NCBI GenBank assembly: GCA_965655095.1
Contig: OZ296656.1
Span: 74,400,001 to 74,464,000, forward strand
From: Haplodiscus bocki
Taxonomy: Eukaryota
DNA length: 64,000 nt
Reading direction: 5' to 3'
This document shows, in pieces, positions 1-63,856 of the stretch. Under the pieces are notes generated by a model. The model worked only from the letters and a program-made list of their open reading frames with translations. It had not been told where the DNA came from and did not search any database. Each line of letters begins with the position of its first letter. Within the stretch, counting starts at the first letter, position 1. The position numbers were made by a program, and so were the translations under genes.

Positions 1-156
1 ACTGCTTTGAAGGTGTCGATTGTTGTTCCCTTTTGCTGTGCTTTGGGGATGTTTTGAGTGTGTTTTTTGGTCCTGTGTACAATTAGATGCCTCTAGTTCT
101 CTTATGTTGTGGTCAGCTTTTGTTTGGCTATTTTTTCCCCAAAGCTGGGCAAAACT

Positions 157-228
157 TGCAAAAACTAGGTACCAATTCACGACGATGAGGTGACGAGATT
201 TACGCACTGCCCTCTGGGATTTTTTGAT
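157..228 (-). pseudogene. B-monomer tRNA-Met relic (example; one per unit)
   Basis: Minus strand ...CCCAGAGGGCAGTGCGTAAATCTCGTCACCTCATCGTCGTGAATTGGTACCTAGTTTTTGCAAG is collinear with the A copy GCGCAGACGGCAGCGCGTAAGTCTCATAATCTTAAGGTCGTGAGTTCGATCCTCACTTGTCGCAAG. Confidence 0.7.
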
Positions 229-479
229 TGATTTTTGACCAGGTCTCTAGTTTCTGTGGAAGTTCTTTTGAACTGATCTTGCCTTTTCTCTATATGAAAC
301 GAGTTTGTTACCTCTCTGCTGTTGTCAACTTTTGGTTGCTTTTGGCATAGTGTTGCTGATCTAGATGTATCTTGTGTGTATTATCTCGGTCAGTTTAGAG
401 ATAGTTGTCTCCGGTGGAGCCTATTTTGTGTTCGTCCTTTGTTGTAGTACCTTTGTTTTTTAGATGACTAGGAGAGACT

Positions 480-552
480 TGCGGCAACTCGAGCTAAAAA
501 ACACGACCTTGACATGTTTAGACTGACACGCTGCCTACTACTCCCTTGTCAC
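480..552 (-). pseudogene. C-monomer tRNA-Met relic (example; one per unit)
   Basis: GTGACAA GG GAGT AGTAGGCA GCGT G TCAGT CTAAACA TGTCA AGGTC GTGTT TTTTAGC TCGAG TTGCCGC A. It is exactly 73 nt, the acceptor stem still mostly pairs, and AGTAGGCAGCGTGTCAGTCT matches the metazoan elongator tRNA-Met D-loop and anticodon-stem sequence. Confidence 0.8.
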
Positions 553-799
553 ATGACTTTCGATGAACTCTGTATGTTCGAGATAGGTCTTGTGGAATTG
601 ACATTGTTTGGAACAAGTTGTTCTGAGAAAGTCGCTGACGCTTCTTGAAATATTGCTTTTTTTGCTTCTGGGCGTTGATGATATGCCTAGTCTTTGTTTT
701 TTGTTTCTGCGGCCTGTCAAATTTAGTTGTCTTGATCATTTTTGTCCCAAATTGTGACTTCTTTCCACAAGTTATTTTAAAGAACGAATATTGAAAACT

Positions 800-871
800 T
801 GCGACAAGTGAGCATCGAACTCACGACCTTAAGATTATGAGACTTACGCCTGCCGTCTGCGCCATTGTCGC
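800..871 (-). tRNA. tRNA-Met(CAT)-like A-monomer copy with a 1-nt D-arm deletion; probable pseudogene
   Basis: Minus strand reads GCGACAA TG GCGC AGACGGCA GGCG TAAGT CTCATAA TCTTA AGGTC GTGAG TTCGATG CTCAC TTGTCGC A. The acceptor and T stems pair perfectly. Confidence 0.75.
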
Positions 872-1755
872 TGGATGGTGACCAGCCTTTGTACTTTTTT
901 GTGAGGTTTTTCTCAACTGAGATTCATTTTCTCCACTTTTCAAGCAATTTTTTTTCACTGCGTTGAAGGTGTCGATTGTTGTTCCCTTTTGCTGTGCTTT
1001 GGGGATGTTTTGAGTGTGTTTTTTGGTCCTGTGTACAATTAGATGCCTCTAGTTCTCTTATGTTGTGGTCAACTTTTGTTTGGCTAATTTTTCCCCAAGG
1101 CTGGGCGAAACTTGCAAAAACTAGGTACCAGTTCACGACGATGAGGTGACGAGATTTACGCACTGCCCTCTGGGATTTTTTGATTGATTTTTGACCAGGT
1201 CTCTAGTTTCTCTGGAAGTTCTTTTGAACTGATCTTGGCTTTTCTCTATATGAAACGAGTTTGTTACCTCTCTGCTGTTGTCAACTTTTGGTTGCTTTTG
1301 GCATAGTGTTGCTGATCTAGATGTATCTTGTGTGTATTATCTCGGTCAGTTTAGAGATAGTTGTCTCCAGTGGAACCTATTTTGTGTTCGTCCTTTGTTG
1401 TAGTACCTTTGTTTTTTAGATGACTAGGAGAGACTTGCGGCAACTCGAGCTAAAAAACACGACCTTGACATGTTTAGACTGACACGCTGCCTACTACTCC
1501 CTTGTCGCATGACTTTCGATGAACTCTGTATGTTCGAGATAGGTCTTGTGGAATTGACATTGTTTGGTACAAGTTGTTATGAAAAAGTCGCTGACGCTTC
1601 TTGAAATATTGCTTTTTTTGCTTCTGCGCGTTGATGATATCCCTAATCTTTGTTTTTTGTTTCTGCGGCCTGTCAAATTTAGTTTTCTTGATCTTTTTTG
1701 TCCCAAATGGTGACTTTTTTCCACAAGTTATTTTAAAGAACGAGTATTGAAAACT

Positions 1756-1828
1756 TGCGACAAGTGAGGATCGAACTCACTACCTTAAGATTATGAGACT
1801 TACGCCCTGCCGTCTGCGCCATTGTCGC
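1756..1828 (-). tRNA. tRNA-Met(CAT), elongator-type, near-intact 73-nt copy
   Basis: GCGACAA TG GCGC AGACGGCA GGGC G TAAGT CTCATAA TCTTA AGGTA GTGAG TTCGATC CTCAC TTGTCGC A. It has a 7-bp acceptor stem, one D-stem mismatch, the U31-U39 pair typical of elongator Met tRNA, an intact B box and TTTT just downstream. Confidence 0.8.
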
Positions 1829-2712
1829 TTGATGGCGAACAGCCTTTGTACTTGCTTTTGGGGTTTTTCTCAACTGATATTCATTTTCTCCATTTTTCAA
1901 GCAATTTTTTTTCACTGCGTTGAAGGTGCCGATTGTTGTTCCCTTTTGCTGTGCTTTGGGGATGTTTTGAGTGTGTTTTTTGGTCCTGTGTACAATTAGA
2001 TGCCTCTAGTTCTCTTATGTTGTGGTCAGCTTTTGTTTGGCTATTTTTTCCCCAAGGCTGGGCAAAACTTGCAAAAACTAGGTACCAATTCACGACGATG
2101 AGGTGACGAGATTTACGCACTGCCCTCTGGGATTTTTTGGTTGATTTTTGACCAGGTCTCTAGTTTCTGTGGAAGTTCTTTTGAACTGATCTTGCCTTTT
2201 CTCTATATGAAACGAGTTTGTTACCTCTCTGCTGTTGTCAACTTTTGGTTGCTTTTGGCATAGTGTTGCTGATCTAGATGTATCTTGTGTGTATTATCTC
2301 GGTCAGTTTAGAGATAGTTGTCTCAGGTGGAACCTATTTTGTGTTCGTCCTTTGTTGTAGTACCTTTGTTTTTTAGATGACTAGGAGAGGCTTGCGGGAA
2401 CTCGAGCTAAAAAACACGACCTTGACATGTTTAGACTGACACGCTGCCTACTACTCCCTTGTCACATGACTTTCGATGAACTCTGTATGTTCGAGATAGG
2501 TCTTGTGGAATTGACATTGTTTGGAACAAGTTGTTCTGAGAAAGTCGCTGACGCTTCTTGAAATATTGCTTTTTTTGCTTCTGGGCGTTGATGATATGCC
2601 TAGTCTTTGTTTTTTGTTTCTGCGGCCTGTCAAATTTAGTTGTCTTGATCATTTTTGTCCCAAATTGTGACTTCTTTCCACAAGTTATTTTGAAGAACGA
2701 ATATTGAAAACT

Positions 2713-2784
2713 TGCGACAAGTGAGGATCGAACTCACGACCTTAAGATTATGAGACTTACGCCTGCCGTCTGCGCCATTGTCGC
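2713..2784 (-). tRNA. tRNA-Met(CAT)-like copy with intact B box and a 1-nt D-arm deletion
   Basis: Same cloverleaf as 1756-1828, with GTTCGATCC intact and a downstream TTTT; the 3' strand of the D stem is one base short. Confidence 0.75.
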
Positions 2785-3668
2785 TTGATGGTGACCAGCC
2801 TTTGTACTTTTTTGTGAGGTTTTTCTCAACTGAGATTCATTTTCTCCACTTTTCAAGCAATTTTTTTTCACTACGTTGAAGGTATCGATTGTTTTTCCCT
2901 TTTGCTGTGCTTTGGGGATGTTTTGAGTGTGTTTTTTGGTCCTGTGTACAATTAGATGCCTCTAGTTCTCTTATGTTGTGGTCAGCATTTGTTTGGCTAT
3001 TTTTTTCCCAAGGCTGGGCAAATCTTGCAAAAACTAGGTACCAATTCACGACGATGAGGTTACGAGATTTACGCACTGCCCTCTGGGATTTTTTGATTGA
3101 TTTTTGACCAGGTATCTAGTTTCTGTGGAGGTTCTTTTGAACTGATCTTGCCTTTTCTCTATATGAAACGAGTTTGTTACCTCTCTGCTGTTGTCAACTT
3201 GTGGTTGCTTTTGGCATAGTGTTGCTGATCTAGATGTATCTTGTGTGTATTATCTCGGTCGGTTTAGAGCTAGTTGTCTCCAGTTGAACTTTTATTGTGT
3301 TCGTCCTTTGTTGTAAAACCTTTCTTTTTTAGATGACCAGGAGAGATTTGCGGCAACTGGAGCTGAAAATCACAACCTTGACATGTTTAGACTGACACGC
3401 TGCCTACTACTCCGTTTTCATATGACTTTCGATGAACGGTGTCTGTTCGAGATACGTCTTGTGGAATTGACATTGTTCGGTACAAGTTGTTATGAAAAAG
3501 TCGCTGACGCCTCTTGAAATATTGCTTTTTTTGCTTCTGCGCGTTGATGATATGCCCAATCTTTGTTTTTTGTTTCTGCGGCCTGTCAAATTTAGTTTTC
3601 TTGATCAATTTTGTCCCAATTTGTGACTTTTTTCCACAAGTTATTTTAAAGAACGAATATTGAAAACT

Positions 3669-3741
3669 TGCGACAAGTGAGGATCGAACTCACGACCTTA
3701 AGATTATGAGACTTACGTGCTGCCGTCTGTGCCATTGTCGC
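3669..3741 (-). tRNA. tRNA-Met(CAT)-like 73-nt copy with two D-stem mismatches
   Basis: GCGACAA TG GCAC AGACGGCA GCAC G TAAGT CTCATAA TCTTA AGGTC GTGAG TTCGATC CTCAC TTGTCGC A. Both D-stem strands show GCGC>GCAC, a CpG-type change. Confidence 0.78.
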
Positions 3742-4629
3742 TTGATGTTGACCGGCCTTTGTAGTTTTATGTGAGGTTTTTCTCAACTGAGATTCAATTT
3801 GTCCCTTTCCCAAGCAACTTTTTTTTCTATTCGTTGTTGTCATTTTTTTCCCTTTTGATCTGCTTTAATGATGATTTGGCTGTGTTATTTTGCGCCTGTG
3901 TACAGTTAGTTGCCTCTAGTTCACTTATGTTGTTTTTTGCTTTTGCTTGGCTAACTTTGTTCCCAAGCCTGGGATAACTTGCAAAAACTATGTACCACAT
4001 TCGGGACTCTGAGATGACGATATTTTTGCGCTGCCCTTCGGGCCCTTTTCGGTTGGTTATTGACCAGGTCTATAGTTTGTCTTGATGTTATTTTGAACTG
4101 AGCATATTTTTTCTCTAAACAAAACGAGTTCGTTGCCTCTGCTGTTGTCAATTTTTGGTTCCTTTTTGCTTAGTGTTGCTGATCTAGATGTATCTTGTGT
4201 GTCTAATCTTTTCCTCGGTCAGTTTAGAACTAGTTGTCTCCAGTGGAACTTATACTGTGTTCGGCCTTTGTTGTAGGTCCTTTGTTTTTGAGGTGACTAG
4301 GAACGATCTGCGGTAACTGGAGTTGAAAAACACTACCCTGTCATGATTAGACATAGACTCTGCCTACTACTCTTAGAACATGACTTTTGATCAACACTGT
4401 ATGTTCTATGATACGTCTCGTGCAACTGATATTTTTTGGTACCCTTTGCTTTTAAAAAGTCGCTGACGCTTCTTGAAACTTTGGTCTTTTTGTTCCTACT
4501 CATTGATGATATGCCTAACCTTTAATTTTTTTGTTTCTGTGGTCTGTTCAAATTTAAATTCTCGTGAGCAGTCTTGTCCAATGTTGGCACTTTTCTTACC
4601 TAATTAATTTAAAGACAAATTGTCAGAAC

Positions 4630-7600
4630 TTGCGAAAAGTGAGTATCGCAGTCACGACCTTAAAAATATGAGAACTACGCGCTGCTATCTGCGCCATTGT
4701 CGCTTGATGTTGACCAGCCTTTGTAGTTTTACGTGAGGTTTTTCTCAACTGAGATTCAATTTGTCCCTTTCTCAAGCAACTTTTTTTTCTATTCGTTGTT
4801 GTCATTTTTTTCCCTTTTGATCTGCTTTAATGATGATTTGGCTGTGTTGTTTTGCGCCTGTGTACAGTTAGTTGCCTCTAGTTCACTTATGTTGTTGTTG
4901 GCTTTTGCTTGGCTAACTTTGTTGCCAAGCCTGAGCAAACTTGCAAAACTATGTACCAAATTCAGGACGCTGAGATGACGATATTTTTGCGCTACCTTTT
5001 GGGCCTTTTTCGGCTGGTTATTGACCAGGTGTCTAGTTTGTCTTGATGTTATTTTGAACTGAGCATATTTTTTCTCTAAACAAAACGAGTTCGTTACCTC
5101 TGCTGTTGTCAATTTTTGGTTCCTTTTTGCTTAGTGTTGCTGATCTAGATTTATCTTGTGTGTCTAATCTTTTCCTCGGTCAGTTTAGAACTAGTTGTCT
5201 CCAGTGGAACTTATACTGTGTTCGGCCTTTGTTGTAGCTCCTTTGTTTTTGAGGTGACTAGGAACGACCTGCGGTAACTGGAGTTGAAAAACACTACCCT
5301 GTCATGATTAGACATAGACTCTGCCTACTACTCTTAGAACATGACTTTTGATCAACACTGTATGTTCTATGATACGTCTCGTGCAACTGATATTTTTTGG
5401 TACCCTTTGCTTTTAAAAAGTCGCTGACGCTTCTTGAAACTTTGGTCTTTTTGTTCCTACTCATTGATGATATGCCTAACCTTTAATTTTTTTGTTTCTG
5501 TGGTCTGTTCAAATTTAAATTCCCGTGAGCAGTTTTGTCCCATGTTGGCACTTTTCCTACCTAATTACTTTAAAGACAAATAGTCAGAACTTGCGAAAAG
5601 TGAGTATCGCACTCACGACCTTAAAATTATGAGAACTACGCGCTGCTATCTGCGCCATTGTCGCTTGATGTTGACCAGCCTTTGTAGTTTTACGTGAGGT
5701 TTTTCTCAACTGAGATTCAATTTGTCCCTTTCTCAAGCAACTTTTTTTTCTCTTCGTTGTTGTCAATTTTGGTTCGCTTTTGATCTGCTTTAATGATGCA
5801 TTGGTTGTGTTGTTTTGCGCCTGTGTACAGTAAGTGGCCTCTAGTTCACTTATGTTGTTGTTGGCTTTTGCTTGGCTAACTTTGTTGCCAAGCCTGGGCA
5901 AACTTGCAAAACTATGTACCAAATTCAGGACGCTGAGATGACGATTTTTTTGCGCTACCCTTCGGGCCCTTTTCGGCTGGTTTTTGACCACGTCTCTAGT
6001 TTGTCTTGATGTTATTTTGAACTGAGCATATTTTTTCTCTAAACAAAACGAGTTTTTTACGTCTGCTGTTGTCAATTTTTGAATCCTTTTCGCTTAGTGT
6101 TGCTGATCTAGATGTATCTTGTGTGTCTAATCTTTTCCTCGGTCAGTTTAGAACTAGTTGTCTCCAGTGGAACGTATATTGTGTTCGGCCTTTGTTGTAG
6201 GTCTTTTGTTTTTGAGATGTCTAGGAAAGACTTAAGGTAACTGGAGTTGAAAAACACGACCCTGTCATGATTAGACATAGACTTCGCCTACTACTCTTAG
6301 AACATGACTTTTGATCAACACTGTATGTTCAATGATACGTCTCATGGAACTGATATTTTTGGTACCCTTTGTTTTCAAAAAGTCGCTGACGCTTCTTGAA
6401 GCTTTGGTCTTTTTGTTGCTACTCATTGATGATATGCCTAACCTTTAATTTTTTCTTTCTGTGGCCTGTTCAAATTTAAATTCTCGTGAGCATCTTGTCC
6501 CATGTTAAAACTTTTCTTACCTAATTATTTAAAGACAAATAGTCAGAACTCGCGAAAAGTGAGTATCGCACTCACGACCTTAAGATTATGAGAACTACGC
6601 GCTGCTATCTGCGCCATTGTCGCTTGATGTTGACCAGCTTTTGTAGTTTTTTGTGAGGTTTTTCTCAACTGAGATTCAATTTGTCCCTTTCTCAAGCAAC
6701 TTTTTTTTCTCTTCGTTGTTGTCAATTTTGGTTCGCTTTTGATCTGCTTTATGGATGCATTGGTTGTGTTGTTTTGCGCCTGTGTACAGTAAGTGGCCTC
6801 TAGTTCACTTATGTTGTTGTTGGCTTTTTCTTGGCTATTTTTGTTCCCAAGTCTGGGCAAACTTGCAAAAACTATGTACCACATTCAGGACGCTGAGATG
6901 ACGATATTTTTGCGCTGCCCTTCGGGCCCTTTGCGGTTGGTTATTGACCATGTCTCTAGTTTGTCTTGATGTTATTTTGAACTGAGCATACTTTTTCTCT
7001 AAACAAAACGAGTTTGTTGCCTCTGCTGTTGTCAGTTTTTGGTTCCTTTTCGCTGAGTGTTGCTGATCTAGATGTATCGTGTGTGTCTAATCCTTTCCTC
7101 GGTCAGTTTAGAACTAGTTGTCTCCAGTGCAACTTATATTGTGTTCGGCCTTTGTTGTAGGTCCTTTGTTTTTGAGATGTCTAGGAAAGACTTGCTGTAA
7201 CTGGAGCTGAAAAACACGACCCTGTCATGATTAGACATAGACTCTGCCTACTACTCTTAGAACATGACTTTTCATCAGCACTGTATGATCTATGATACGT
7301 CTCGTGGAACTGATGTTTTTTGGTACCCTTTGTTCTTAAAATTCGCTGACGCTTCTTGAAACTTTGCTTTTTTGTTCCTGCTCATTGATGATATGCCTAA
7401 TCTTTAATTTTTTTGTTTCTGTGGCCTGTTCAAAACTAAATTCTCGTGAGCAGTCTTGTCCCATGTTGGCACTTTCCTTCCCTAATTATTTAAAGACAAA
7501 TAGTCAGAACTCGCGAAAAGTGAGTATCGCACTCACGAACTGAAGATTATGAGAACTACGCGCTGCTATCTGCACCATTGTCCCTTGATGTTGACCAGCC

Positions 7601-10600
7601 TTTGTAGTTGTATGTGAGGTTTTTCTCAACTGAGATTCAATTTGTCCCTTTCTCAAGCAACTTTTTTTTCTCTTCGTTGTTGTCAATTTTGGTTCGCTTT
7701 TGATCTGCTTTAATGATGCATTGGTTGTGTTGTTTTGCGCCTGTGTAAAGTAAGTGGCCTCTAGTTCACTTATGTTGTTGTTGGCTTTTGCTTGGCTAAC
7801 TTTGTTGCCAAGCCTGGGCAAACTTGCAAAACTATGTATCAAATTCAGGACGCTGAGATGACGATTTTTTTGCGCTACCCTTCGGGCCCTTTTCGGCTGG
7901 TTTTTGACCAGGTCTCTAGTTTGTCTTGATGTTATTTTGAACTGAGCATATTTTTTCTCTAAACAAAACGAGTTTGTTACCTCTGCTGTTGTCAATTTTT
8001 GGGTCCCTTTCGCTTAGTGTTGCTGATCTAGATGTATCGTGTGTGTCTAATCATTTCCTCGGTCAGTTTGGAACTAGTTGTCTCCAGTGGAACTTATATT
8101 GTGTTCGGCCTTTGTTGTAGCTCTTTTGTTTTTAAGATGTCTAGGAAAGACTTGCTGTAACTATAGCTGAAAAACACAACCCTGTCATGATTAGACATAG
8201 ACTCTGCCTACTACTCTTAGAACATGACTTTTGATCAACACTGTATGTTCTATGATACGTCTCGTGCAACTGATATTTTTTGGTACCCTTTGCTTTTAAA
8301 AAGTCGCTGACGCTTCTTGAAACTTTGGTCTTTTTGTTCCTACTCATTGATGATATGACTAACCTTTAATTTTTTTGTTTCTGTGGTCTGTTCAAATTTA
8401 AATTCTCGTGAGCAGTCTTGTCCCATGTTGGCACTTTTCTTACCTAATTAATTTAAAGACAAATTGTCAGAACTTGCGAAAAGTGAGTATCGCACTCACG
8501 ACCTTAAGATTATGAGAACTACGCGCTGCTATCTGCGCCATTGTCGCTTGATGTTGACCAGCTTTTGTAGTTTTTTGTGAGGTTTTTCTCAACTGAGATT
8601 CAATAGTCCCTTTCTCAAGCAACTTTTTTTTCTCTTCGTTGTTGTCAATTTTGGTTCGCTTTTGATCTGCTTTATGGATGCATTGGTTGTGTTGTTTTGC
8701 GCCTGTGTACAGTAAGTGGCCTCTAGTTCACTTATGTTGTTGTTGGCTTTTTCTTGGCTATTTTTGTTCCCAAGTCTGGGCAAACTTGCAAAAATTATGT
8801 ACCACATTCAGGACGCTGAGATGACGATATTTTTGCGCTGCCCTTCGGGCCCTTTGCGGTTGGTTATTGACCATGTCTCTAGTTTGTCTTGATGTTATTT
8901 TGAACTGAGCATACTTTTTCTCTAAACAAAACGAGTTTGTTGCCTCTGCTGTTGTCAGTTTTTGGTTCCTTTTCGCTGAGTGTTGCTGATCTAGATGTAT
9001 CGTGTGTGTCTAATCCTTTCCTCGGTCAGTTTAGAACTAGTTGTCTCCAGTGCAACTTATATTGTGTTCGGCCTTTGTTGTAGGTCCTTTGTTTTTGAGA
9101 TGTCTAGGAAAGACTTGCTGTAACTGGAGCTGAAAAACACGACCCTGTCATGATTAGACCTAGACTCTGCCTACTACTCTTAGAACATGACTTTTGATCA
9201 GCACTGTATGATCTATGATACGTCTCGTGGAACTGATGTTTTTTGGTACCCTTTGTTCTTAAAATTCGCTGACGCTTCTTGAAACTTTGCTTTTTTGTTC
9301 CTGCTCATTGATGATATGCCTAATCTTTAATTTTTTTGTTTCTGTGGCCTGTTCAAAACTAAATTCTCGTGAGCAGTCTTGTCCCATGTTGGCACTTTCC
9401 TTCCCTAATTATTTAAAGACAAATAGTCAGAACTCGCGAAAAGTGAGTATCGCACTCACGAACTGAAGATTATGAGAACTACGCGCTGCTATCTGCACCA
9501 TTGTCCCTTGATGTTGACCAGCCTTTGTAGTTGTATGTGAGGTTTTTCTCAACTGAGATTCAATTTGTCCCTTTCTCAAGCAACTTTTTTTTCTCTTCGT
9601 TGTTGTCAATTTTGGTTCGCTTTTGATCTGCTTTAATGATGCATTGGTTGTGTTGTTTTGCGCCTGTGTAAAGTAAGTGGCCTCTAGTTCACTTATGTTG
9701 TTGTTGGCTTTTGCTTGGCTAACTTTGTTGCCAAGCCTGGGCAAACTTGCAAAACTATGTATCAAATTCAGGACGCTGAGATGACGATTTTTTTGCGCTA
9801 CCCTTCGGGCCCTTTTCGGCTGGTTTTTGACCAGGTCTCTAGTTTGTCTTGATGTTATTTTGAACTGAGCATATTTTTTCTCTAAACAAAACGAGTTTGT
9901 TACCTCTGCTGTTGTCAATTTTTGGGTCCCTTTCGCTTAGTGTTGCTGATCTAGATGTATCGTGTGTGTCTAATCATTTCCTCGGTCAGTTTGGAACTAG
10001 TTGTCTCCAGTGGAACTTATATTGTGTTCGGCCTTTGTTGTAGCTCTTTTGTTTTTAAGATGTCTAGGAAAGACTTGCTGTAACTATAGCTGAAAAACAC
10101 AACCCTGTCATGATTAGACATAGACTCTGCCTACTACTCTTAGAACATGACTTTTGATCAACACTGTATGTTCTATGATACGTCTCGTGCAACTGATATT
10201 TTTTGGTACCCTTTGCTTTTAAAAAGTCGCTGACGCTTCTTGAAACTTTGGTCTTTTTGTTCCTACTCATTGATGATATGCCTAACCTTTAATTTTTTTG
10301 TTTCTGTGGTCTGTTCAAATTTAAATTCTCGTGAGCAGTCTTGTCCCATGTTGGCACTTTTCTTACCTAATTAATTTAAAGACAAATTGTCAGAACTTGC
10401 GAAAAGTGAGTATCGCACTCACGACCTGAAGATTATGAGAAGTACGCGCTGCTATCAGCTCCATTGTCGCTTGATGTTGACCAGCCTTTGTAGTTTTACG
10501 TGAGGTTTTTCTCAACTGAGATTCTATTTGTCCCTTTCTCCAGCAACTTTTTTTTCTCTTCGTTGTTGTCATTTTTGGTTCGCTTTTGATCTGCTTTATG

Positions 10601-28600: not shown

Positions 28601-28735
28601 GAGCAGTCTTGTCCCATGTTGGCACTTTTCTTCCCTAATTATTTAAAAACAGTCAGAATTTGCGAAATTGAGTATCGCACTCACGACCTTAAGATTATTA
28701 GAAGTACGCGCTGCTATCTGCGCCATTGTCGCTTG
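4630..28735 (-). pseudogene. About 26 A-monomer tRNA-Met pseudogenes in the homogenised core (one per unit)
   Basis: The T-loop is changed to TGCGATA or TGCAATA (B box broken), D-loop GG is changed to AG, the acceptor stem has a mismatch (TTTTCGC), and the downstream TTTT is replaced by TTCT. Confidence 0.85.
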
Positions 28736-31700
28736 ATGTTGACCAGCCTTTGTAGTTTTATGTGAGGTTTTTCTCAACTGAGATTCAATTTGTCCCTTTC
28801 TCAAGCAACTTTTTTTTCTCTTCGCTGTCAATTTTGGTTCGCTTTTGATCTGCTTTAATGATGCATTGGTTGTGTTGTTTTGCGCCTGTGTACAATAAGT
28901 GGCCTCTAGTTCACCTATGTTGTTGTTGGCTTTTGCTTGGCTAACTTTGTTGCCAAGCCTGGGCAAACTTGCAAAACTATGTACCAAATTCAGGACGCTG
29001 AGATGACGATTTTTTTGCGCTACCCTTCGGGCCCTTTTCGGCTGGTTTTTGACCAGGTCTCTAGTTTGTCTTGACGTTATTTTGAACTGGGCATACTTTT
29101 TCTCCAAACAAAACGAGTTTGTTGCCTCTGCTGTTGTCAGTTTTTGGTTCCTTTTCGCTGAGTGTTGCTGATCTAGATGTATCTTTTGTGTATTATCATT
29201 TTTTTCGGTCAGTTTGGAATTAGTTGACTCCAGTGGAACTTATATTGTGCTCGGCCTTTGTTGTAGGTCCTTTGTTTTTGAGATGACTAGGAAAGACTTG
29301 CGGCAACCGGAGCTGAAAAACACGACCTTTACATGTGTAGACTCACACGCTGCCTACTACTTCGTTGTCACTTGACTTTCGATCAACTCTGTATGTTCGA
29401 AATACGTCTTCTGGAATTGATTTTGTTTGGTACACCTTGTTTTTAAAAGTCACTGACGCTTCTTGAATTTTTTTTGTTTCTGCGCGTTAATTGTGTGCCT
29501 AATTTTTGTATTTTGTTTCTGTGACCTGTTCAAATTTGGTTTTCCTGATCTTTCTTGTCCCATGTCGGGACTTTTCCTACCTAAATTACTTTAGAAAGCG
29601 AATACTCAAATCTTAGGAAAAGTCAGGATCGAACTTACGACCTTAAGATTATGGGAACTACGCGCTGCCGTGTGTGCCATTTTCGCTTGAGGTTGCGCAG
29701 CCTCTGTAGTTTTTATGTGAGGTTTTCCCAACTAAGCTTCATTTTCTCCGTTTCTCAAGCAACTTTTTTTCGCTTCGTTTCGGTGTCCAGTTTTTGTTCC
29801 CTTTTGCTGTGCTTTGATGATATTTTGGGTGTGTGTTTGTGGGCCTGTGTACATTTAGTTGCCTCTAGTTCACTTATGTTGTGGTCGGCTTTTGTTTGGC
29901 TAACTTTGTTCCCAAGGCTGTTTAAACTTGCAAGAACTAGCTACCAAATTCAGGTCGCTGAGATGACGAAAGTGACGCGCTGCCCCCCTGGGGTTTTTCG
30001 GTTGGTTTTCTACCACGTCTCTAGTGTCTCTTGAAGTTCTTTTGAACTGAGCTTACTTCTCTGTATCTGAAACAAGTTTTTTAACTCTCTGCTGTTGTCA
30101 ACTTTTGATTCCTTTTCGCTGAGTGTTGCTGATCTAGATGTACGTTATGTGTAATATCATTTGTTCTGTCAGCTCAGAACTATTCGTCTCCAGTGGAAAT
30201 TATATTGTGTTCGGCCTTTGTTGTAGGTCCTTTGTTTTTGAGATGTCTAGGGAAGACTTGCTGTAACTGGAGCTGAAAAACACGACCCTGTCATGATTAG
30301 ACATAGACTCTGCCTACTACTCTTAGAACATGACTTTTGATCAGCACTGTATGTTCTATGATACGTCTCGTGGAACTGATGTTTTTTGGTTCCCTTTGTT
30401 CTTAAAAAGTGGCTGACGCTTCTTGAAACTTTGCTTTTTTTGTTCCTGCTCATTGATGAAATGCTTAATCTTTAATTTTTTTTGTTTCTGTGGCCTGTTC
30501 AAAACTAAATTCTCGTGAGCAGTCTTGTCCCATGTTGGCACTTTTCTTCCCTAATTATTTAAAAACAAATAGTCAGAACTTGCGAAATTGAGTATCGCAC
30601 TCACGACCTTAAGAATATTAGAAGTACGCGCTGCTATCTGCGCCATTGTTGCTTGATGTTGACCAGCCTTTGTAGTTTTATGTGAGGTTTTTCTCAACTG
30701 AGATTCAATTTGTCCCTTCCTCAAGCAACTTTTTTTTCTCTTCGTTGTTGTCAATTTTGGTTCGCTTTTGATCTGCTTTAATGATGCATTGGTTGTGTTG
30801 TTTTGCGCCTGTGTACAGTAAGTGGCCTCTAGTTCACGTATGTTGTTGTTGGCTTTTGCTTGGCTAACTTTGTTCCCAAGGCTGGTTAAATTTGCAAGAA
30901 CTAGCTACCAAATTCAGGTCGCTGAGATGACGAAAGTGACGCGCTGCCCCCCTGGGGTTTTTCGGTTGGTTTTATACCACGTCTGTAGTGTCTCTTGAAG
31001 TTCTTTTGAACTGAGCTTACTTCTCTGTATCTGAAACAAGTTTTTTAACTCTCTGCTGTTGTCAACTTTTGGTTCCTTTTCGCTGAGTGTTGCTGATCTA
31101 GATGTACGTTATGTCTAATATCATTTGTTCTGTCAGCTTAGAACTATTCGTCTCCAGTGGAACTTATTCTGTGTTGGGCCTTTGTTGTACTACTTTTGTT
31201 TTTGAGATGACTAAGAAAGACTTGCGCCAAGTGGAAACAAAGAACTTGACCCTGACATGTTTAGACTCACAAGCTGCCTACTACTTTTTTGTCAGGTGAG
31301 TTTCGATCAACTCTGTATGTGCCAGATACGTCTTGTGGAACTGATATTTTTTGGTACACCTTGTTTTTAAAAAATTGCTGACGCTTCTTGAAATTTTAAA
31401 TTTTTTGTTGCTGGGCGTTGATGATTTGCTTAATCTTGGTTTTCATTTTCTGCGGCCTCTTCAAAGTTAGTTTACCTGATCATTCTTGTCCCATGTTGAC
31501 TTTTCTATCCTAAATTACTTTAAAGAACGAAATTTAAAAACCTGAGACAAGTGAGGATCGAACGCACGACCCTAAGATTTTGAGACTTACGCGCTGCTGT
31601 CTGCTCTGTTGTTGCGTGATGTTGAACAGCCTATGTCGTTTTATTTAAGTTTTTCTCAACTGTGAATCGTTTTCTCCTTTTCTCAAGCAGCTTCTCTTCA

Positions 31701-34700
31701 CTCGTTGTCGCTGTCGTTTTTTTGTTCCCTTTTGTTGTGCTTTGATGTTGTTTTCGGTGTTTTTTTTTGAGCCTGTGTGCAATTAGTTGCCTGTAGTTCA
31801 CTTATGTTGTGGTCGGCTTTTGTTGAACTAACGTTGTTCCGAATGTTGGGCAAACTTGCAAAAACTATGTACCAAACTCGCGACGCTGAGAAGGCGAGAT
31901 TTACGCGCTGCCCTTTGGGCTCTTTTTGGTTGGTTATTGACCAAGTCTCTAGTTTCTCTTCAAGTTTATTGTGAGTGAGCTTACTTTTTCTCTTTCTGAA
32001 ACAAAGTTGTTTGTTATTTCTCTGCTGTTGTCAATATTTGGTTCGTTTTGGCGAAGTGTTGCTGATTCAGATGTGTCTTGTGCGTTTTATCTTTTTTTTG
32101 GTCAGTTTAGACCTAGTCGTCTCCAGTGGAACTTATATTGTGTTCGGCCTTTGTTGTAGGTCCTTTCTTTTTGAGATGACTAGGAAAGACTTGCGGCAAC
32201 CTGAGCTGGAGAACACGACCTTGACATCTTTAGACTCACACGTTGTCACATGACTTTCAATCACCTCTGTATCTCCGAGATACCTCTTGTGGAACTGATA
32301 TTGTTTGGTACACATTGTTTTTGAATAGTTGCTGATGCTTCGTGAATATTTTTCTTTGTTTCTGCGCGTCGATGATATGCCTGATCTTTGTTTTCTTTTT
32401 GGTTTGGCGTGTTCAAAGTTAGTTGTCTTGATCATTTTTGTCCCATGTTGGGACTTTTTTGCCTAAGTTAATTTTTTGAACGAATTTTCAAAACTCACCA
32501 CAAGTGAGGATCGAACTCACGTTCCTAAGAATAGGAGACTTACGCACAACCGTCTGCTCCATTTTGCTTGATTTTGAGCAGCCTCTTTAGACTTATGTGA
32601 TGTTTTTCTCAACTGAAATTCTTTTTCTCCCTTTCTAAAGCGACTTTTTTTCACTCCGTTGTTGGTGTCGATGTTCTGTTCCCCTTTGCTTTGCTTGGAC
32701 GATGTTTTGAGTGTGTTATTTGGGACTATGTGCATTTAGTTGCCTCTACTTCACTGATGTAGTGTTTGGCCTTTGTTTAGCTAACTTTGTTCCCAAGGCT
32801 AGGCAAACTTGCATGAACTAGCTATCAAAATAACGACGCTGAGATGACGAGGTTTACGGGCTGCCCTTGTCGGTTGGTTATTGACCATGTCTCTAGTTTC
32901 CCTTGAAGTTTTTATGAACTGAGTTTACTTTTTCTCTGTCTGAAACAAGTTTGTTCCTTCTCTGTTGTTGTCAAGTGTTGGTTCCTTTTGGCTCTGTGTT
33001 GCTGATTTTAGATGTATTTTGTGTGTTTTATCAGTTTTTTGGTGAGTTTAGAACTGGTTGTGTCCAGTGGAACCTATATTGCGTTCGGTCTTGTTTGTAC
33101 TACTTTTGTTTTTGAGACGACTAGGAAAGACTTGCGGCAACTAGGGACAGAAAATACGTCCTTGACATGTTTCGATTCACACGCTGCCTACTACTCCGTT
33201 GTCACATAGCTTTCGATCAACTGTGTTCGTTCGAGATACGTCTTGTGGAACTGATATTGTTTGCTACACCTTGTTTTTAAAAAATCGCTGACGCTTCTTG
33301 AAATTTTGTTTTTCCTTTCTGCGCGTTGATAATGTTCCTAATCCGTTTTTTGTTTTCTGTGGCCTCTTCAAAGTTAGTTGTCTTGATCATTCTTGTCCCA
33401 TCTTGGGACTGTTGTTTCCTAAGTTACTTTTTTGAATGAGTTTTCAAAACTCGCGGCAAGTGAGGATCGACCCCACGACCCTAAGAATATGAGACTTACG
33501 CGTTGCCGTCTGCACCATTTTGGCTTGTTGTTGAACAGCCTCTTCAGATTTTTGTGGGTTTTTCTCAACTGAGGTTCATTTTTTCCCTTTCTAAAGCGAC
33601 CTTTTCTCACTTCGTTGTCGGTGTCGATCTTTTGTTCCCTTTTGCTTTGCTTGGACGATGTTTTTAGAGTGTTTTTTTTTTACCCTTTGTGCAATTAGTT
33701 GATTCCAGTTCACCAATGTCGTGGTTGGCTTTTGTTTGGCAAACTTTGGTCCCAAGGCTAAGCAACTTTGTAAAAACTATCTACCAGTTTCGCGACGCTG
33801 AGACGGCGAAATTTACGCGCTGCCCTTTGGGCATTTTTTGGTTGGTTATTGACCAGATCTCGAGTTTCTCTTGAAGTTCCTTTGAACTGAGCCTACTTTT
33901 TTCTCTGTATGAAACAAGTTTTTTACCTCTCTGCTGTTGTCAATTTATGGTTCCTTTTCGCTTGGTGTTGCTGATCCTGATGTATCTTGTGTGGAATATC
34001 ATTTTTTCGGTCAGTTCTGAACTAGTTGTCTCCAGTGGAACTTATATTGCGTTCGGCCTTGGTTGTACTACTTTTGTTTTTCAGATGACTAGTAAAGATT
34101 TGCGGCAACTGGAGACAAAAAAACTCGACCTTGAAATGTTTAAACTCACACGCTGCCTACTACTTCGTTGTTGCGTGACTTTCGATCAACGCTGTACCTG
34201 CGAGATACGTCTTGTTGAACTGATATTGTTTAGTACACCTTGTTTTTAGAAAGTCCGTGATGCTTCCTGAACTTTTTTTTGTTTCTGCGCGTTGATGACA
34301 TGCCTGATGTTTGTTTTTTGTTTCTGTGACCTGTTCAAATTTAGCCTTCCTGAGCATTCTGGTCCCATGTTGGGACTCTCCTTTCCTAAATTAATTTAAA
34401 GAACGCATATTGAAAACTTGCGACAATTGAGTATCGCACTCACGACCTTAAGATTATTAGAAGTACGCGCTGCTATCAGCTCCATTGTCGCTTGATGTTG
34501 ACCAGCCTTTGTAGTTTTACGTGAGGTTTTTCTCAACTGAGATTCACTTTGTCCCTTTCTCAAGCAACTTTCTTTTCTCTTCGTTGTTGTCAATTTTGGT
34601 TCGCTTTTGATCTGCTTTAATGATGCATTGGTTGTGTTGTTTCGAGCCTGTGTACAGTAAGTGGCCTCTAGTTCACTTATGTTGTTGTTGGCTTTTGTTT

Positions 34701-35381
34701 GGCAAACTTTGGTCCCAAGGCTAAGCAACTTTGTAAAAACTATCTACCAGTTTCGCGACGCTGAGACGGCGAAATTTACGCGCTGCCCTTTGGGCATTTT
34801 TTGGTTGGTTATTGACCAGATCTCGAGTTTCTCTTGAAGTTCCTTTGAACTGAGCCTACTTTTTTCTCTGTATGAAACAAGTTTTTTACCTCTCTGCTGT
34901 TGTCAATTTATGGTTCCTTTTCGCTTGGTGTTGCTGATCCTGATGTATCTTGTGTGGAATATCATTTTTTCGGTCAGTTCTGAACTAGTTGTCTCCAGTG
35001 GAACTTATATTGCGTTCGGCCTTGGTTGTACTACTTTTGTTTTTCAGATGACTAGTAAAGATTTGCGGCAACTGGAGACAAAAAAACTCGACCTTGAAAT
35101 GTTTAAACTCACACGCTGCCTACTACTTCGTTGTTGCGTGACTTTCGATCAACGCTGTACCTGCGAGATACGTCTTGTTGAACTGATATTGTTTAGTACA
35201 CCTTGTTTTTAGAAAGTCCGTGATGCTTCCTGAACTTTTTTTTGTTTCTGCGCGTTGATGACATGCCTGATGTTTGTTTTTTGTTTCTGTGACCTGTTCA
35301 AATTTAGCCTTCCTGAGCATTCTGGTCCCATGTTGGGACTCTCCTTTCCTAAATTAATTTAAAGAACGCATATTGAAAACT

Positions 35382-35454
35382 TGCGACAAGTGAGGATCGA
35401 ACTCACGATCTGAAGATTATGAGACTTACGCACTGCCGTGTGCTCCATTGTCAC
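35382..35454 (-). pseudogene. tRNA-Met(CAT)-like copy at the diverged array edge, B box retained
   Basis: GTGACAA TG GAGC ACACGGCA GTGC G TAAGT CTCATAA TCTTC AGATC GTGAG TTCGATC CTCAC TTGTCGC A. Confidence 0.75.
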
Positions 35455-36799
35455 CTGATATTGAACATCTTCTGTAGGTTTATGTGAGCTGTTTCCCAGC
35501 TGAGTTTCATTTCCTGCCTTTCTGAAGCAACTTTTTTCCATTCGTTCTCGGTGTCATTTTTTTGTTCCCTTTTGCTGTGCTTTGACTATGTTTTGGGTGT
35601 TTTTTGGGCCTGTGTAGAATTAGTTTCCTCTAGTTCACTGATCTTGTTTTCGGCCTTTGTTTTGCTCACTTTGTTTCTGAGGCTGGGCCAAACTTGCGGA
35701 AACTATTGACCAAATTAACGACGCTGAGATGGCGAGACTTACCTGCTGCCTACTAGTCTGTTGTCACTTGACTTCTGATCAGCTCTGTAGTTTCGATGAG
35801 ACGTCGTGTGGAACTGATATTTTTAGCGCAGCTTTCAAAAAGTCGCTGGCTTTTCTCGAAATTCATTTTTTTGTTTCTGCGCGTTGTTGATAGATCGTCT
35901 AATCTTTGTTTTTTGTTTCCGCGGCATGTTCAAAGTTGGTTGTCTTGATCCATTTTGTCTCTTGTTGGGACTTTTCTTTCCAAATTGTTTTTGGTAAAAC
36001 TTGCGACAAGTGGGGATCCAACTCACGATCTTAAGAATATGAGAATTACGCGCTTCCGTCTACGCCTTTGTCGCTTGTTGTTAAGCAGGCTCTGTAGGTT
36101 TGTTTTAGGTTCTTCTCAAACCGGGTTAGTTTTTTGTCCCTATCTGAAACAAATTTGTTCTTTGTTGGTGTCGACGTTTTGTTCCTTTTTGCTGCCAACT
36201 GATGGTTCGTGCGGCTTTTGTTTTTGCTGCCTCTGTATAAATAATTGCCTTTAGTTTTCTTCTGTTGCATTTGGCTTTTTGTTTCCTACTTTTTTTTGGA
36301 AATGGCTTGGCAGAACTTGTGATTAGACTTACGTGCTGCCCACTGCGCCGTTGTCACTTGCAATTTGATTACCTCTGTAGGTTCGATGATACGTCTATTG
36401 GAACTGATACTGTTTTGCACACATTGTTTTTGAACAGTCGCTGACAGTTCTCAAATTTTATTTTTGTTCCTTTGTTTCTGCGCGTTGATCATAGATCTAA
36501 TTCTTGTTTCTGTGGCCTGTTCAAAGTTAGTTGTCCTGATCCATTTTTTCTCTGATTGGGTTTTTTTCTTTCCTAACCTATTTTAGTGAAAACTCAAAGT
36601 CGTCATTTTTGCTTGACTTTAGTTAATCTCTATATGTTTGTTTCACGTTTCTTCAGCTGTCATTCAACATTCATATTGCTATTTCGGAGTATTGAACCAT
36701 GCAAAAGAGCGAACTAGCGCTTGTCCAGCTTCAGCGCCAGATAGCGGCAAGAAGCCGTTACACTGTTGGTCTCTTGTTTTTCCTCAACCAACAATCGCC

Positions 36800-36872
36800 A
36801 ACGGAAAATGAGGTTGGAACTCACGAGCACAAAATAAAGAGGCTTGCGCGCCTTCTGCTGCGCCATTGTTAC
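36800..36872 (-). pseudogene. Last, highly decayed tRNA relic marking the array boundary
   Basis: Minus strand GTAACAATGGCGCAGCAGAAGGCGCGCAAGCC...CTCGTGAGTTCCAACCTCAT is collinear with the A-monomer tRNA over 73 nt. Confidence 0.65.
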
Positions 36873-37057
36873 ATGATTGCAGACGTATCATGGTTTTTCT
36901 GTTTTGGGCCATATTATATATTATGAAAACAGAATGATCCGCTTAAATGGGTCACATCCGTCGTTTTTTACCCGATGTTTGCCAATTGCGTTCACACTAA
37001 AACGATGATCATTAACGTTTCTGAGCGTTATTTTTTTTAACCAAATTGTAGCAGTTA

Positions 37058-38035
37058 TGTCGCAGAATGGGACTGGAATACTAAAAATTCTCAAAACTTT
37101 CAAAATTTGGAGTTTTTTGGAAAAATAGATGGATTTTTTTCGAATTAAAACCTTGAAATTTTTCAAAATCGCTAAATGTGGCAAATTGTTTCTAGAATGC
37201 GTCTCAAATGGTAATATTTCTCTAAAATTGTCTTTCCTCTTTATTTATGAGGTTTTTTGGGCTAAAAATAAAAAAAAATCAACAATGGAAAAATTAGAAA
37301 ATGTGATGAAGAAACAGAGTATTTTGAAAAAAAAAGACGTTTTCATCCTTCTGAAAGGCATTTTTAACAAAGTTGGAGGTTGCAAAATATCACGGTGGTA
37401 GCCGGGTGTGTTGTTGTTTTGCTGCTTAACTGAAAACGTGGTCAGCGTTTTGTGATCAACTACGTTATCCCTGTTTTTGGAAGTTGATCGATTTTCTTTT
37501 GTTCTGCGCAGTCAGTGATGGAGATTTAAAGGTACTTCAGACAAGACGACTGGCTACCACCGGCATATTTTCCGCCCTCCAATTTTGTTAGAGGTTCCTT
37601 TTGAAAGGATGAAAGCGGTTTTTTCAAAAATAAATATTCTCTCCTCATCAGATTTAGTAATTTTTTCCAAATTGAAAATTCTCGTGATTTCTGCAAAAAA
37701 ATCCTCAATTCAGGTGGAAAAAAAATTCTATGAAATAGTATCATTTGATATGACTTCTACAGCAAATTTGCCACCTTTAACGATTTTGGAAAAAGTCAAG
37801 TTTTCTTGAAATATTCCAAATTTTTATTTTTTAAAAAATCAAATTTCGTTCATTTTTGAGGATTGCAAGTATTTCGTTCGCAATATACGGCAAATTTGCT
37901 ATAATTTGGTCATAAAACATTTCAAATTCAGAATCTGGGGATTCTGCCCGGAAATTTGTTCAGTAATGATTAAAAAGCGCACCGCTTTGATTGGATGATT
38001 TTCCTTCCATGTTATAACTATGGGCGGAAAATGAT
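37058..38035. repeat. Two inverted copies of a dispersed non-coding repeat family (probable DNA-transposon relics)
   Basis: 37360-37415 (aacaaagttggaggttgcaaaatatcacggtggtagccggg) is the reverse complement of 37541-37590. 37880-38035 is the reverse complement of 63857-64000. Related pieces lie near 49480-49520 and 49765-49835. Confidence 0.7.
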
Positions 38036-41989: not shown

Positions 41990-42116
41990 GTCGTTTTTGC
42001 TGGTTGCTGCTGCTGATTGCTGCTATTGATTGCTGCTGCTGGTTGCTGGTGTTGATTGCTGCTGCTGGTTGCTGCTATTGATTGCTGCTGCTGGTTGCTG
42101 CTGTTGATTGCTGCTC
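41990..42116. repeat. 26-bp CTG/CAG-rich minisatellite (ttgattgctgctgctggttgctgcta), about 4 copies
   Basis: Read directly; the unit length is not a multiple of 3. Confidence 0.85.
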
Positions 42117-42117
42117 A

Positions 42118-42505
42118 AAAAGTCTTTGAATATTTCCGGGTTTATGATGATTTGCGGCTAAGACAAATTTGCAGGCGAATAAGTCTTTGAATATTTTCGG
42201 ATTCTTGATGATTTGCGGCTAAGACAAATTTGCAGGCGAAAAAGTCTTTGAATGCCTTCGGATTCTTGATGATTTGCGGCTAAGACAAATTTGCAGGCGA
42301 AAAAGTCTTTGAATGCCTTCGGGTTGCTGATGATTTGCGGCTAAGACAAATTTGCAGGCGAATAAGTCTTTGAATACCTTCGGGTTGTTGATGATTTGCG
42401 ACTAAGACAAATTTGCAGACAAAAAAGTCTTTGAATATTTTCGGGAGATGATGAAAAGTCTTTGAATTTTTTCGGGTTGTTGGTGAAAAGTCTTTGAATT
42501 TTTCC
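42118..42505. repeat. 61-bp minisatellite, 5 full copies plus partials
   Basis: aagtctttgaat...gatgatttgcggctaagacaaatttgcaggcgaa repeats with a 61-bp period. Confidence 0.95.
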
Positions 42506-63684: not shown

Positions 63685-63856
63685 CCCTAGACTAAAAAGT
63701 TAGCACTTCTTGCAAGAATCTTACAAGAAGCCTTGCAAGATCTTGCCTGACAATGCATTATTCTTAAAGACATCTTTCAAGAATCTTGCAAGAATTGAAC
63801 TTTTTTGTAAGAATCTTGCAAGATCTTGCAAGAACTAAATTTTCTGTCAACTAGGG
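63685..63856. mobile_element. CTTGCAAG-rich MITE, internally deleted short copy
   Basis: Termini are CCCTAG...CTAGGG, and both halves align to the ends of 58786-59594. Confidence 0.85.

What the first reader, a model, noticed from the sequence alone, without database searches (positions are those of the whole stretch)
1..36900. A >36-kb satellite built from an elongator tRNA-Met gene array, organised as a trimeric higher-order repeat
Seen: the obvious period is ~960 bp, but each unit hides three ~320-bp monomers, each starting with acttgc and containing a ~73-nt tRNA-Met-collinear segment on the minus strand. That is roughly 110 tRNA-derived segments in the window. Known: the segment matches the metazoan elongator tRNA-Met pattern (...GCGCAGTAGGYAGCGCGTCAGTCTCATAATCTGAAGGTCGTGAGTTCGATCCTCAC...). 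Inference: an ancestral 320-bp tRNA-gene tandem array decayed, then an A-B-C trimer was re-amplified, as in alpha-satellite-style HOR evolution. It could be centromeric or heterochromatic DNA, or a source of tRNA-like transcripts. I do not recognise it as a described family but could not search.
Basis: partly seen in the sequence, partly recalled or inferred. Interest (0 to 1): 0.82.

Follow-up and report, generated by a model that had tools for sequence, protein, structure and literature searches.

The report
Decayed three-part tRNA-Met gene array
About 36 kb of this animal (probably coral) chromosome is a head-to-tail array of methionine tRNA genes, nearly all dead, whose 960-bp repeat is built from three old tRNA-gene copies; such tRNA arrays are already described in cnidarians, so it is ordinary.

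Summary
Window 1-35690 is 37 head-to-tail units of 953-964 bp plus a partial one. Decayed relics continue to 36898. Each unit is three ~320-bp monomers (A, B, C), 116 in all, each beginning with a tRNA-Met(CAU)-derived segment on the minus strand.

A and C are homologous over their full length. B matches only over the tRNA part plus about 65 bp. In a tree, A, B and C each form one clade (support 0.97-1.0). An independent metagenome contig, about 80% identical, has the same order. So the trimer formed once and was then amplified.

Only C still looks like a tRNA. Nine copies pass Rfam's threshold and four pass ARAGORN, all with D-stem defects. The youngest, most homogenised units (96-100% identical) carry a dead gene.

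This is a tRNA gene array decaying into satellite DNA by unequal crossing-over. Such arrays are published for Hydractinia and Nematostella, and Arabidopsis has a triplet-unit tRNA array. This scan already found tRNA-Ile and tRNA-Arg arrays on other DNA of this genome.

Nothing supports a centromere role. RNA could not be tested. Verdict: a new member of a known kind, of low to moderate interest.

The parts
1..35690 (-). Main tandem array: partial C monomer (1-152) plus 37 A-B-C units of 953-964 bp. The tRNA-sense strand is minus. The + strand is T-rich.
   Evidence: AT skew is -0.30 to -0.37 over the array and about 0 in the flank.
153..3777 (-). Alpha subfamily: units U1-U3 (96-98% identical to each other) and most of U4. 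Holds the four best tRNA-Met copies.
   Evidence: Identity matrix. The in-register alpha-to-beta switch lies at about 3750-3778, inside U4's C monomer and just past its tRNA.
1109..1431 (-). Example A monomer (unit 2): a decayed tRNA-derived head plus a spacer homologous to the C spacer.
1432..1751 (-). Example B monomer (unit 2): a decayed tRNA-derived head (own model 24.2 bits at 1436-1508). Only the first ~65 bp of the spacer resemble C.
1752..2065 (-). Example C monomer (unit 2), carrying the tRNA-Met(CAT) gene or pseudogene.
800..871 (-). tRNA-Met(CAT), 49.3 bits, one base missing in the D stem.
1756..1828 (-). tRNA-Met(CAT), 53.9 bits, the best copy in the window, with one D-stem mismatch.
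2713..2784 (-). tRNA-Met(CAT), 52.3 bits, one base missing in the D stem.
3669..3741 (-). tRNA-Met(CAT), 49.9 bits, two D-stem mismatches.
3778..28965 (-). Beta subfamily, U5-U30, 92-100% identical. The core U18-U30 is 96-100% identical with an alternating two-unit (1.92 kb) pattern. In the core units the C tRNA is dead (anticodon AAT, changed B box, one-base deletion in the acceptor stem); the older beta units keep anticodon CAT.
28966..35690 (-). Divergent edge units U31-U37: most are only 76-85% identical to every other unit (U32 is 88-92% to the beta units, and U36/U37 are 92% to each other), yet all keep the A-B-C order.
35691..35997 (-). A/B recombinant monomer: A-type 3' half of the tRNA segment joined to a B-type 5' half and B spacer. 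This equals a ~320-bp deletion by exchange between the A and B tRNA segments.
35998..36280 (-). Relic C monomer with a tRNA-like segment at 36002-36074 (Rfam 39.2 bits).
36281..36590 (-). Relic B monomer. The tRNA 3' half is deleted. The 5' half is better kept than in other B copies.
36800..36872 (-). Outermost tRNA-derived relic, 39.5 bits (E 8e-8) with the model built from C copies. It is separated from the last B by about 210 bp of unrelated sequence.

Best explanation
This is a tandem array of elongator-type tRNA-Met(CAU) genes that has largely decayed and now evolves as satellite DNA.

Inferred: a tRNA gene with about 245 bp of spacer was first duplicated head to tail at a ~320-bp period, as in other tRNA arrays of this genome and of other cnidarians.

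Shown: neighbouring monomers then diverged into three types. B is the most distant. A and C are closer to each other. One A-B-C trimer became the unit of amplification, because every sampled unit, including one on an independent contig, has the same order and each type is a single clade.

Inferred mechanism: unequal crossing-over and gene conversion in 960-bp register, later also in 1.92-kb register. This gave a homogenised core (beta units, up to 100% identical) with older, divergent units at the edge. Two recombination footprints are visible: an in-register alpha/beta switch and an A/B hybrid monomer.

Only the C slot kept a recognisable gene. It was conserved above spacer level in some lineages, but not in the beta subfamily that fills most of the window. 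The recent amplification therefore did not depend on tRNA function.
For: Array and monomer map.

Homology against shuffled controls.

Tree: A, B and C are each exactly monophyletic (support 0.97, 1.0, 0.996), with stem lengths of 0.17, 0.44 and 0.22.

Independent contig: metagenome contig L001 is 78-82% identical and has the order B-C-A-B-C.

tRNA calls occur only in C: 9 copies reach Rfam's gathering score, 17 have E<10, and ARAGORN. The consensus of 13 C copies is a perfect cloverleaf.

Conservation is flat along the unit among divergent units. However, the tRNA part is 86-97% identical against 64-82% for the spacer between alpha, U4, U37, the tail copy and L001 (z about 2.5-4.4 for most of these pairs, down to 1.7). 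It shows no excess in beta or the other edge units.

The beta core carries anticodon AAT and a changed B box. Only 4 of 116 segments keep A box, B box and T-run together.

Recombination footprints.

Array ORFs have no Pfam match.

Published precedent: PMC11067881, PMC2888827, PMC2886086.
Against: The B spacer beyond about 145 bp shows no detectable similarity to A or C. B may therefore descend from a tRNA-Met copy with a different spacer, not from the same 320-bp monomer.

Most A segments score at background level with the covariance model. Their tRNA origin rests on sequence profiles and on their exact register.

No expression, chromatin or whole-genome data were available. 'No function' is an inference from sequence decay.

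The array's left end is outside the window. More intact alpha copies may lie there.
Confidence: 0.85

Rival explanations
1. It is a working tRNA-Met gene cluster. The alpha-type C genes, perhaps with many more to the left of the window, supply elongator tRNA-Met. The A and B relics are just spacer, and the beta block is a dead side branch.
For: Four alpha copies keep the A box, B box and a T-run directly after the gene, and score 49-54 bits. The tRNA part is conserved above spacer level between alpha, L001, U37 and the tail copy (z 2.7-4.4). In Hydractinia, tRNAs for all 20 amino acids are found in such arrays.
Against: Each of the four alpha copies carries a D-stem lesion, of three different kinds. 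That looks like independent decay. Their scores are below those I would expect for intact eukaryotic tRNAs (my own knowledge, not tested here). No RNA evidence exists. In the window, 33 of 37 units are not alpha, and most of those score far below alpha in Rfam.
Confidence: 0.15
2. It is a satellite born from a tRNA-derived SINE or retroposed tRNA copy, like the newt PolIII/TAN family, not from a tRNA gene array.
For: tRNA-related tandem repeats of suggested SINE or retroposition origin exist in amphibians.
Against: The tRNA-derived segment spans the full gene, from position 1 to the discriminator base. In the best-kept copies a T-run follows at once, and the 5' flank is conserved between monomer types. 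No SINE body or A-rich or simple-repeat tail is seen. The same genome holds plain tRNA-Ile and tRNA-Arg gene arrays.
Confidence: 0.04
3. It is the cargo array of a Helitron/Helentron-type rolling-circle element, as earlier scan notes report for short tRNA-like arrays in this genome.
For: Earlier notes describe Helentron-type elements carrying 1-28 tRNA-like copies in this genome. I did not check those notes.
Against: The array is at least 36 kb long. Its right edge fades through older, divergent units and relics into unique sequence. No terminal hairpin or element end was seen there. The left end is not visible.
Confidence: 0.04
4. It is a functional chromatin element: a centromeric or pericentromeric satellite, or a TFIIIC/Pol III boundary array.
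For: It has a layered higher-order layout with a homogenised core and divergent edges. tRNA genes can act as boundaries; a human tRNA tandem repeat has been proposed as a boundary element (cited in PMC11067881).
Against: The B box matches the pattern used here in only 8 of 116 segments. This genome has many other higher-order satellites and at least two other tRNA arrays, so this one has no special claim. No chromatin data exist.
Confidence: 0.05

Closest known systems
Tandem tRNA gene arrays of cnidarians (Hydractinia symbiolongicarpus and H. echinata; Nematostella vectensis) - PMC11067881, PMC2888827
   Same: Evenly spaced head-to-tail copies of one tRNA gene with mutually similar spacers of a few hundred bp, in tens to hundreds of copies, in a cnidarian-like genome. 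Nematostella has more than 17,000 tRNA genes and pseudogenes, 89% of them clustered.
   Different: Here most copies are dead. The repeat unit holds three anciently diverged copies of the same tRNA gene, only one still recognisable. The text I read in those papers does not mention such an internal trimer.
Arabidopsis thaliana chromosome 1 triplet-unit tRNA array (27 t-units of three pre-tRNA genes) - PMC2886086
   Same: A three-gene unit is the basal unit of amplification. Expansion and homogenisation are explained by unequal crossing-over, concerted evolution and neutral copy-number drift.
   Different: In the plant array a number of the genes produce transcripts, according to the paper. From my own memory, it combines two isoacceptor types (Tyr, Tyr, Ser). 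Here all three slots derive from tRNA-Met, and two are ancient pseudogenes.
Alpha-satellite-type higher-order repeats
   Same: Diverged monomers sit inside a unit that is itself repeated at much higher identity, with a homogenised core, divergent edge layers and nested larger periods (here 1.92 kb).
   Different: The monomer is a Pol III gene plus spacer (~320 bp), not a nucleosome-length non-genic monomer. Unit copies range down to 76% identity. One monomer (B) is only partly alignable. No centromere link is shown.
tRNA-related tandem repeats of amphibians (Xenopus OAX, Rana/PolIII, newt PolIII/TAN from retroposed tRNA-Glu), as listed in PMC12054243
   Same: Satellite-like tandem families containing a tRNA-derived, Pol III-type segment.
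   Different: A SINE or retroposition origin has been suggested or reported for those families. Here the full gene with its terminator and conserved 5' flank points to direct tandem duplication of a gene.
Entamoeba tRNA gene arrays (PMC2652664)
   Same: tRNA genes organised in long tandem arrays whose units can hold several tRNA genes.
   Different: Entamoeba units hold up to five tRNA genes, separated by short-tandem-repeat spacers. Taking those genes to be different and functional is my own understanding, not something read here. The organism is unrelated.

Membership tests
Tandem tRNA gene array (cnidarian type) | Head-to-tail, evenly spaced copies in one orientation, in tens of copies or more | tested here: met
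   116 monomers (37 full trimer units) in one orientation, at periods of about 320 and 960 bp.
Tandem tRNA gene array (cnidarian type) | Each repeat contains a tRNA gene recognised by a tRNA covariance model | tested here: inconclusive
   Only C monomers match RF00005: 9 of 40 reach the gathering score and 17 have E<10. A and B never match. All copies derive from a tRNA by sequence profile.
Tandem tRNA gene array (cnidarian type) | Spacers between copies are similar to one another | tested here: met
   Same-slot spacers are 64-100% identical. A and C spacers are homologous at 24-35 bits.
Tandem tRNA gene array (cnidarian type) | Genes are transcribed by Pol III and yield mature tRNA | not testable with these tools
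   No RNA run is on record. By sequence, only 4 of 116 segments keep both boxes and the T-run.
Higher-order-repeat satellite | Monomers within the unit are homologous to each other | tested here: met
   A-C are homologous over the full length (z 3.2-6.8 per segment). B-C are homologous over the tRNA part and the next 65 bp only.
Higher-order-repeat satellite | Same-slot monomers of different units are closer than different slots of one unit | tested here: met
   A, B and C are each monophyletic with support 0.97-1.0. Units are 76-100% identical.
Centromeric satellite | Occupies the centromere (CENP-A binding, primary constriction) | not testable with these tools
   No chromatin or cytological data. 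Other higher-order satellites exist in this genome.
SINE-derived satellite | tRNA-related head joined to a SINE body and tail; dispersed copies with target-site duplications | tested here: inconclusive
   No SINE-like tail was seen, and a T-run directly follows the gene in the best copies. Genome-wide dispersed copies could not be searched.
Helitron/Helentron cargo array | Array bounded by rolling-circle element termini | tested here: inconclusive
   The right edge fades into relics and unique DNA without a terminal hairpin. The left edge is outside the window.

The most novel reading that the evidence does not exclude
The array, or its better-kept alpha-type part extending left of the window, is not inert. 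It could be a Pol III/TFIIIC-bound chromatin domain (a boundary or nuclear-positioning element), or a source of tRNA-Met-like small RNAs. On that reading the three-slot unit is maintained because one live Pol III gene per 960 bp is what is used.
Probability: 0.07. Interest if true: 0.6.

Novelty: new member of a known kind. Interest (0 to 1): 0.27.

Why it matters
It gives a clean, datable example of how a Pol III gene array turns into satellite DNA. One slot of three stayed gene-like for a long time. Later a subfamily with a dead gene was the one that got amplified, so the recent amplification did not depend on tRNA function. It also warns annotators that tRNA counts in cnidarian genomes are inflated by such arrays. 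It does not open a new kind of system.

Tried and rejected
1. My first alignment tests with harsh or free-end scoring gave no discrimination. A global-alignment identity and pair count was also useless: shuffled segments reached 43 of 73 'identities'. I discarded those numbers and kept only the anticodon and copy listing.

2. Tandem Repeats Finder missed the array because its longest period is 500.

3. The sigma-70 promoter and terminator scan is irrelevant for a eukaryotic Pol III array.

4. ORFs of 90-170 aa in the array have no Pfam match and are taken as chance. Weak Rfam 'Plastid-ycf2' hits on the + strand are just the antisense of the tRNA copies, far below threshold.

The metagenome scan used a word from the A spacer only. 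Local alignment scripts still used them.

6. Centromere, SINE and Helentron readings were considered and ranked low (see rivals).

7. I did not run the large protein searches. No claim here rests on a protein.
Full report
**What is there**

The first 36 kb of the window differ sharply from the rest. The + strand is T-rich, with AT skew of -0.30 to -0.37 against about 0 beyond 38 kb. Autocorrelation peaks at 956-964 bp and at about 1913-1927 bp.

blastn with one unit finds 37 consecutive full copies from 153 to 35690, a partial copy at 1-152 and degenerate copies to about 36590. The window begins inside the array, so its true length is unknown and is at least 36 kb.

**Sub-structure**

nhmmer with the three thirds of a unit tiles the region as C(partial)+(ABC)x37+B,C,B,C(relic). 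That is 116 monomers of about 310-330 bp. Of these, 89 begin with exact ACTTGC.

On the minus strand this motif is the last bases of a tRNA acceptor stem, the discriminator base and the start of the trailer.

Exact 7-mer matches show the predicted faint diagonals at lags 309-313 and 650-651: 57-94 matches against a background median of 5. Each of the eight main lags from 956 to 964 gives 1000-6100 matches. The two faint lags are the C-to-A and A-to-C distances.

**Is the monomer homology real?**

Profile HMMs built separately for the tRNA-derived 85 bp and for the spacer were scored against the other monomer types and against dinucleotide shuffles.

| Comparison | Real score (median bits) | Highest shuffle score (bits) |
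|---|---|---|
| tRNA part, A<->C | 16-20 | 2.7 |
| tRNA part, B->C | 13.6 | 2.9 |
| tRNA part, B->A | 8.3 | 0.0 |
| Spacer, A<->C | 24-35 | 3.6 |
| Spacer, B against A or C | about 0 | 4.7 |

In the reverse direction the B comparisons are weaker: the C profile scores B copies at a median of 2.3 bits and the A profile at 0.

Segment-wise Smith-Waterman tests on the consensus monomers agree:

- A-C is significant in every segment (z 3.2-6.8).
- B-C is significant only in the 65 bp next to the tRNA part (z=5.0, 0 of 1000 shuffles).
- The majority-consensus B tRNA part is weak (z=2.0).

So A and C are full-length homologues. B shares the tRNA-derived segment and a short piece of its 5' flank. The rest of B has either diverged beyond recognition or has another origin.

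Rfam's general tRNA model matches only C monomers. Nine copies reach the gathering score (37-54 bits) and 17 have E<10. ARAGORN calls four, all tRNA-Met with anticodon CAT.

The consensus of 13 C copies is a perfect cloverleaf. I built a model from them and searched with filters off:

- Every C copy scores 68-98 bits.
- The outermost relic at 36800-36872 scores 39.5 bits (E 8e-8).
- B copies of the alpha and edge units score 17-29.5 bits (E 3e-5 to 0.05).
- Beta-type B copies score nothing.
- A copies mostly score 8-13 bits, the same level as chance hits in the flank. One A copy reaches 20.9 bits.

A and B have therefore lost tRNA structure. Their origin is shown by collinear sequence similarity, not by fold.

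From established tRNA knowledge, the C gene is elongator-type. It has the usual T-loop, and it lacks the run of three G-C pairs at the base of the anticodon stem that marks initiators.

**History**

A maximum-likelihood tree of 113 window monomers plus three from an outside contig puts A (38), B (39) and C (39) each in one exact clade. Support is 0.97, 1.0 and 0.996. Stem lengths are 0.17, 0.44 and 0.22 substitutions per site. The trimer therefore formed once, before all sampled units diverged, and A and C are the closer pair.

The outside contig L001 is 1154 bp. It was found in a metagenome collection with a 20-base word from the A spacer. It is 78-82% identical to all window subfamilies and reads B-C-A-B-C. 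This is independent support for both the reality and the age of the trimer.

The unit identity matrix shows layers:

| Units | Subfamily | Identity |
|---|---|---|
| U1-U3 | alpha | 96-98% |
| U4 | hybrid | switches from alpha to beta at about 3750-3778, just past its tRNA |
| U5-U30 | beta | 92-100% |
| U18-U30 | beta core | 96-100%, with an alternating two-unit pattern that explains the 1.92-kb period |
| U31-U37 | edge | mostly 76-85% to all other units (U32 88-92% to beta; U36/U37 92% to each other) |

Beyond U37 lie four relics:

- An A/B recombinant monomer at 35691-35997, with an A-type tRNA 3' half joined to a B-type 5' half and B spacer.
- A relic C monomer.
- A truncated B monomer.
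- After about 210 unrelated bases, a last tRNA relic.

A homogenised core with older variants at the edge, plus in-register and out-of-register exchange footprints, is the classic signature of unequal crossing-over. The mechanism itself is inferred.

**Function**

Among divergent units, conservation is flat along the 960 bp: 0.70-0.86 per 20-column bin, with the tRNA segments no higher than the spacers.

Pairwise comparisons give a different picture for some lineages. Between alpha, U4, U37, the tail C copy and L001, the tRNA part is 86-97% identical while the spacer is 64-82%. For most of these pairs z is about 2.5-4.4; the weakest, U37 against L001, is 1.7. The pairs are not independent. Beta and the other edge units show no excess.

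My reading is that the C gene was under constraint for much of the family's history and was later released.

Today every alpha copy has a D-stem lesion, of three different kinds. The beta core has anticodon AAT, a changed B box and a one-base deletion in the acceptor stem. Only 4 of 116 segments keep A box, B box and a T-run together.

The most recently amplified units carry a dead gene, so the recent amplification did not depend on tRNA function. Array ORFs have no Pfam match.

**Expression and other samples**

Four runs of one coded organism hold 24-30% of the sampled words. One run of a second coded organism holds 5%. None is on record as RNA.

Nothing was laid. Expression therefore stays untested.

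**Surroundings**

The right flank (36.9-64 kb) is gene-poor. It holds one 323-aa ORF with a TRAF/MATH domain at 43256-44227 on the minus strand. Ten other ORFs have no Pfam match. No rolling-circle element end is evident at the array edge.

**Comparison with what is known**

- The Hydractinia genome paper describes evenly spaced tandem arrays of tRNAs for all 20 amino acids, with similar spacers of hundreds to thousands of bases, and reports tRNA arrays in Nematostella (PMC11067881).
- Nematostella has more than 17,000 tRNA genes and pseudogenes, 89% of them clustered (PMC2888827).
- Arabidopsis has 27 triplet units of three pre-tRNA genes. They expanded by unequal crossing-over with the triplet as the basal unit (PMC2886086).
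- tRNA-related satellites are listed for amphibians (PMC12054243).
- Earlier notes of this scan report a tRNA-Ile array, a tRNA-Arg array and many higher-order satellites in this same genome. I did not test those notes.

**Verdict**

The object is a further example of a described kind, a cnidarian-type tRNA gene array decaying into satellite DNA. Its particular feature is a three-slot unit derived from one tRNA gene.

Noticed in passing
window 43256-44227 (-): A 323-aa ORF with a TRAF/meprin MATH domain (E 1.5e-16).
   Followed up: partly
window 59496-59572 and 63767-63834: Two short arrays of an 11-bp repeat whose consensus units are reverse complements of each other (after rotation), about 4.3 kb apart. 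They may be terminal inverted repeats of a foldback or DNA element. Similar palindromic motifs occur at 40245-40362.
   Followed up: no
window 37148-37257 / 37695-37804 and 37331-37414 / 37541-37624: Nested inverted repeats (110-nt arms at 71% complementarity, 84-nt arms at 76%) about 250 bp beyond the last tRNA-derived relic (36800-36872). This looks like a foldback or MITE-like element.
   Followed up: no
window 41998-42504: A compound minisatellite with 13/26-bp, 61-bp and 31-bp periods, in a G-skewed stretch (GC skew 0.21).
   Followed up: no
window 60396-61072: A cluster of short, imperfect palindromic repeats of 11-41 bp rich in CATGAT/ATCATG.
   Followed up: no
L001 (metagenome contig Ga0126343_10282954, 1-1154): A contig from an environmental metagenome holds 1.2 units of the same trimer satellite at about 80% identity, with a near-consensus C tRNA. 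It comes from another locus or a related host species. The source sample could not be identified here.
   Followed up: partly
window 799-871, 1755-1828, 2712-2784, 3668-3741 (+): Sub-threshold Rfam hits to 'Plastid-ycf2 5UTR' (32-34 bits, cut-off 65.7) on the strand opposite the tRNA copies. They are an antisense-of-tRNA artefact.
   Followed up: yes
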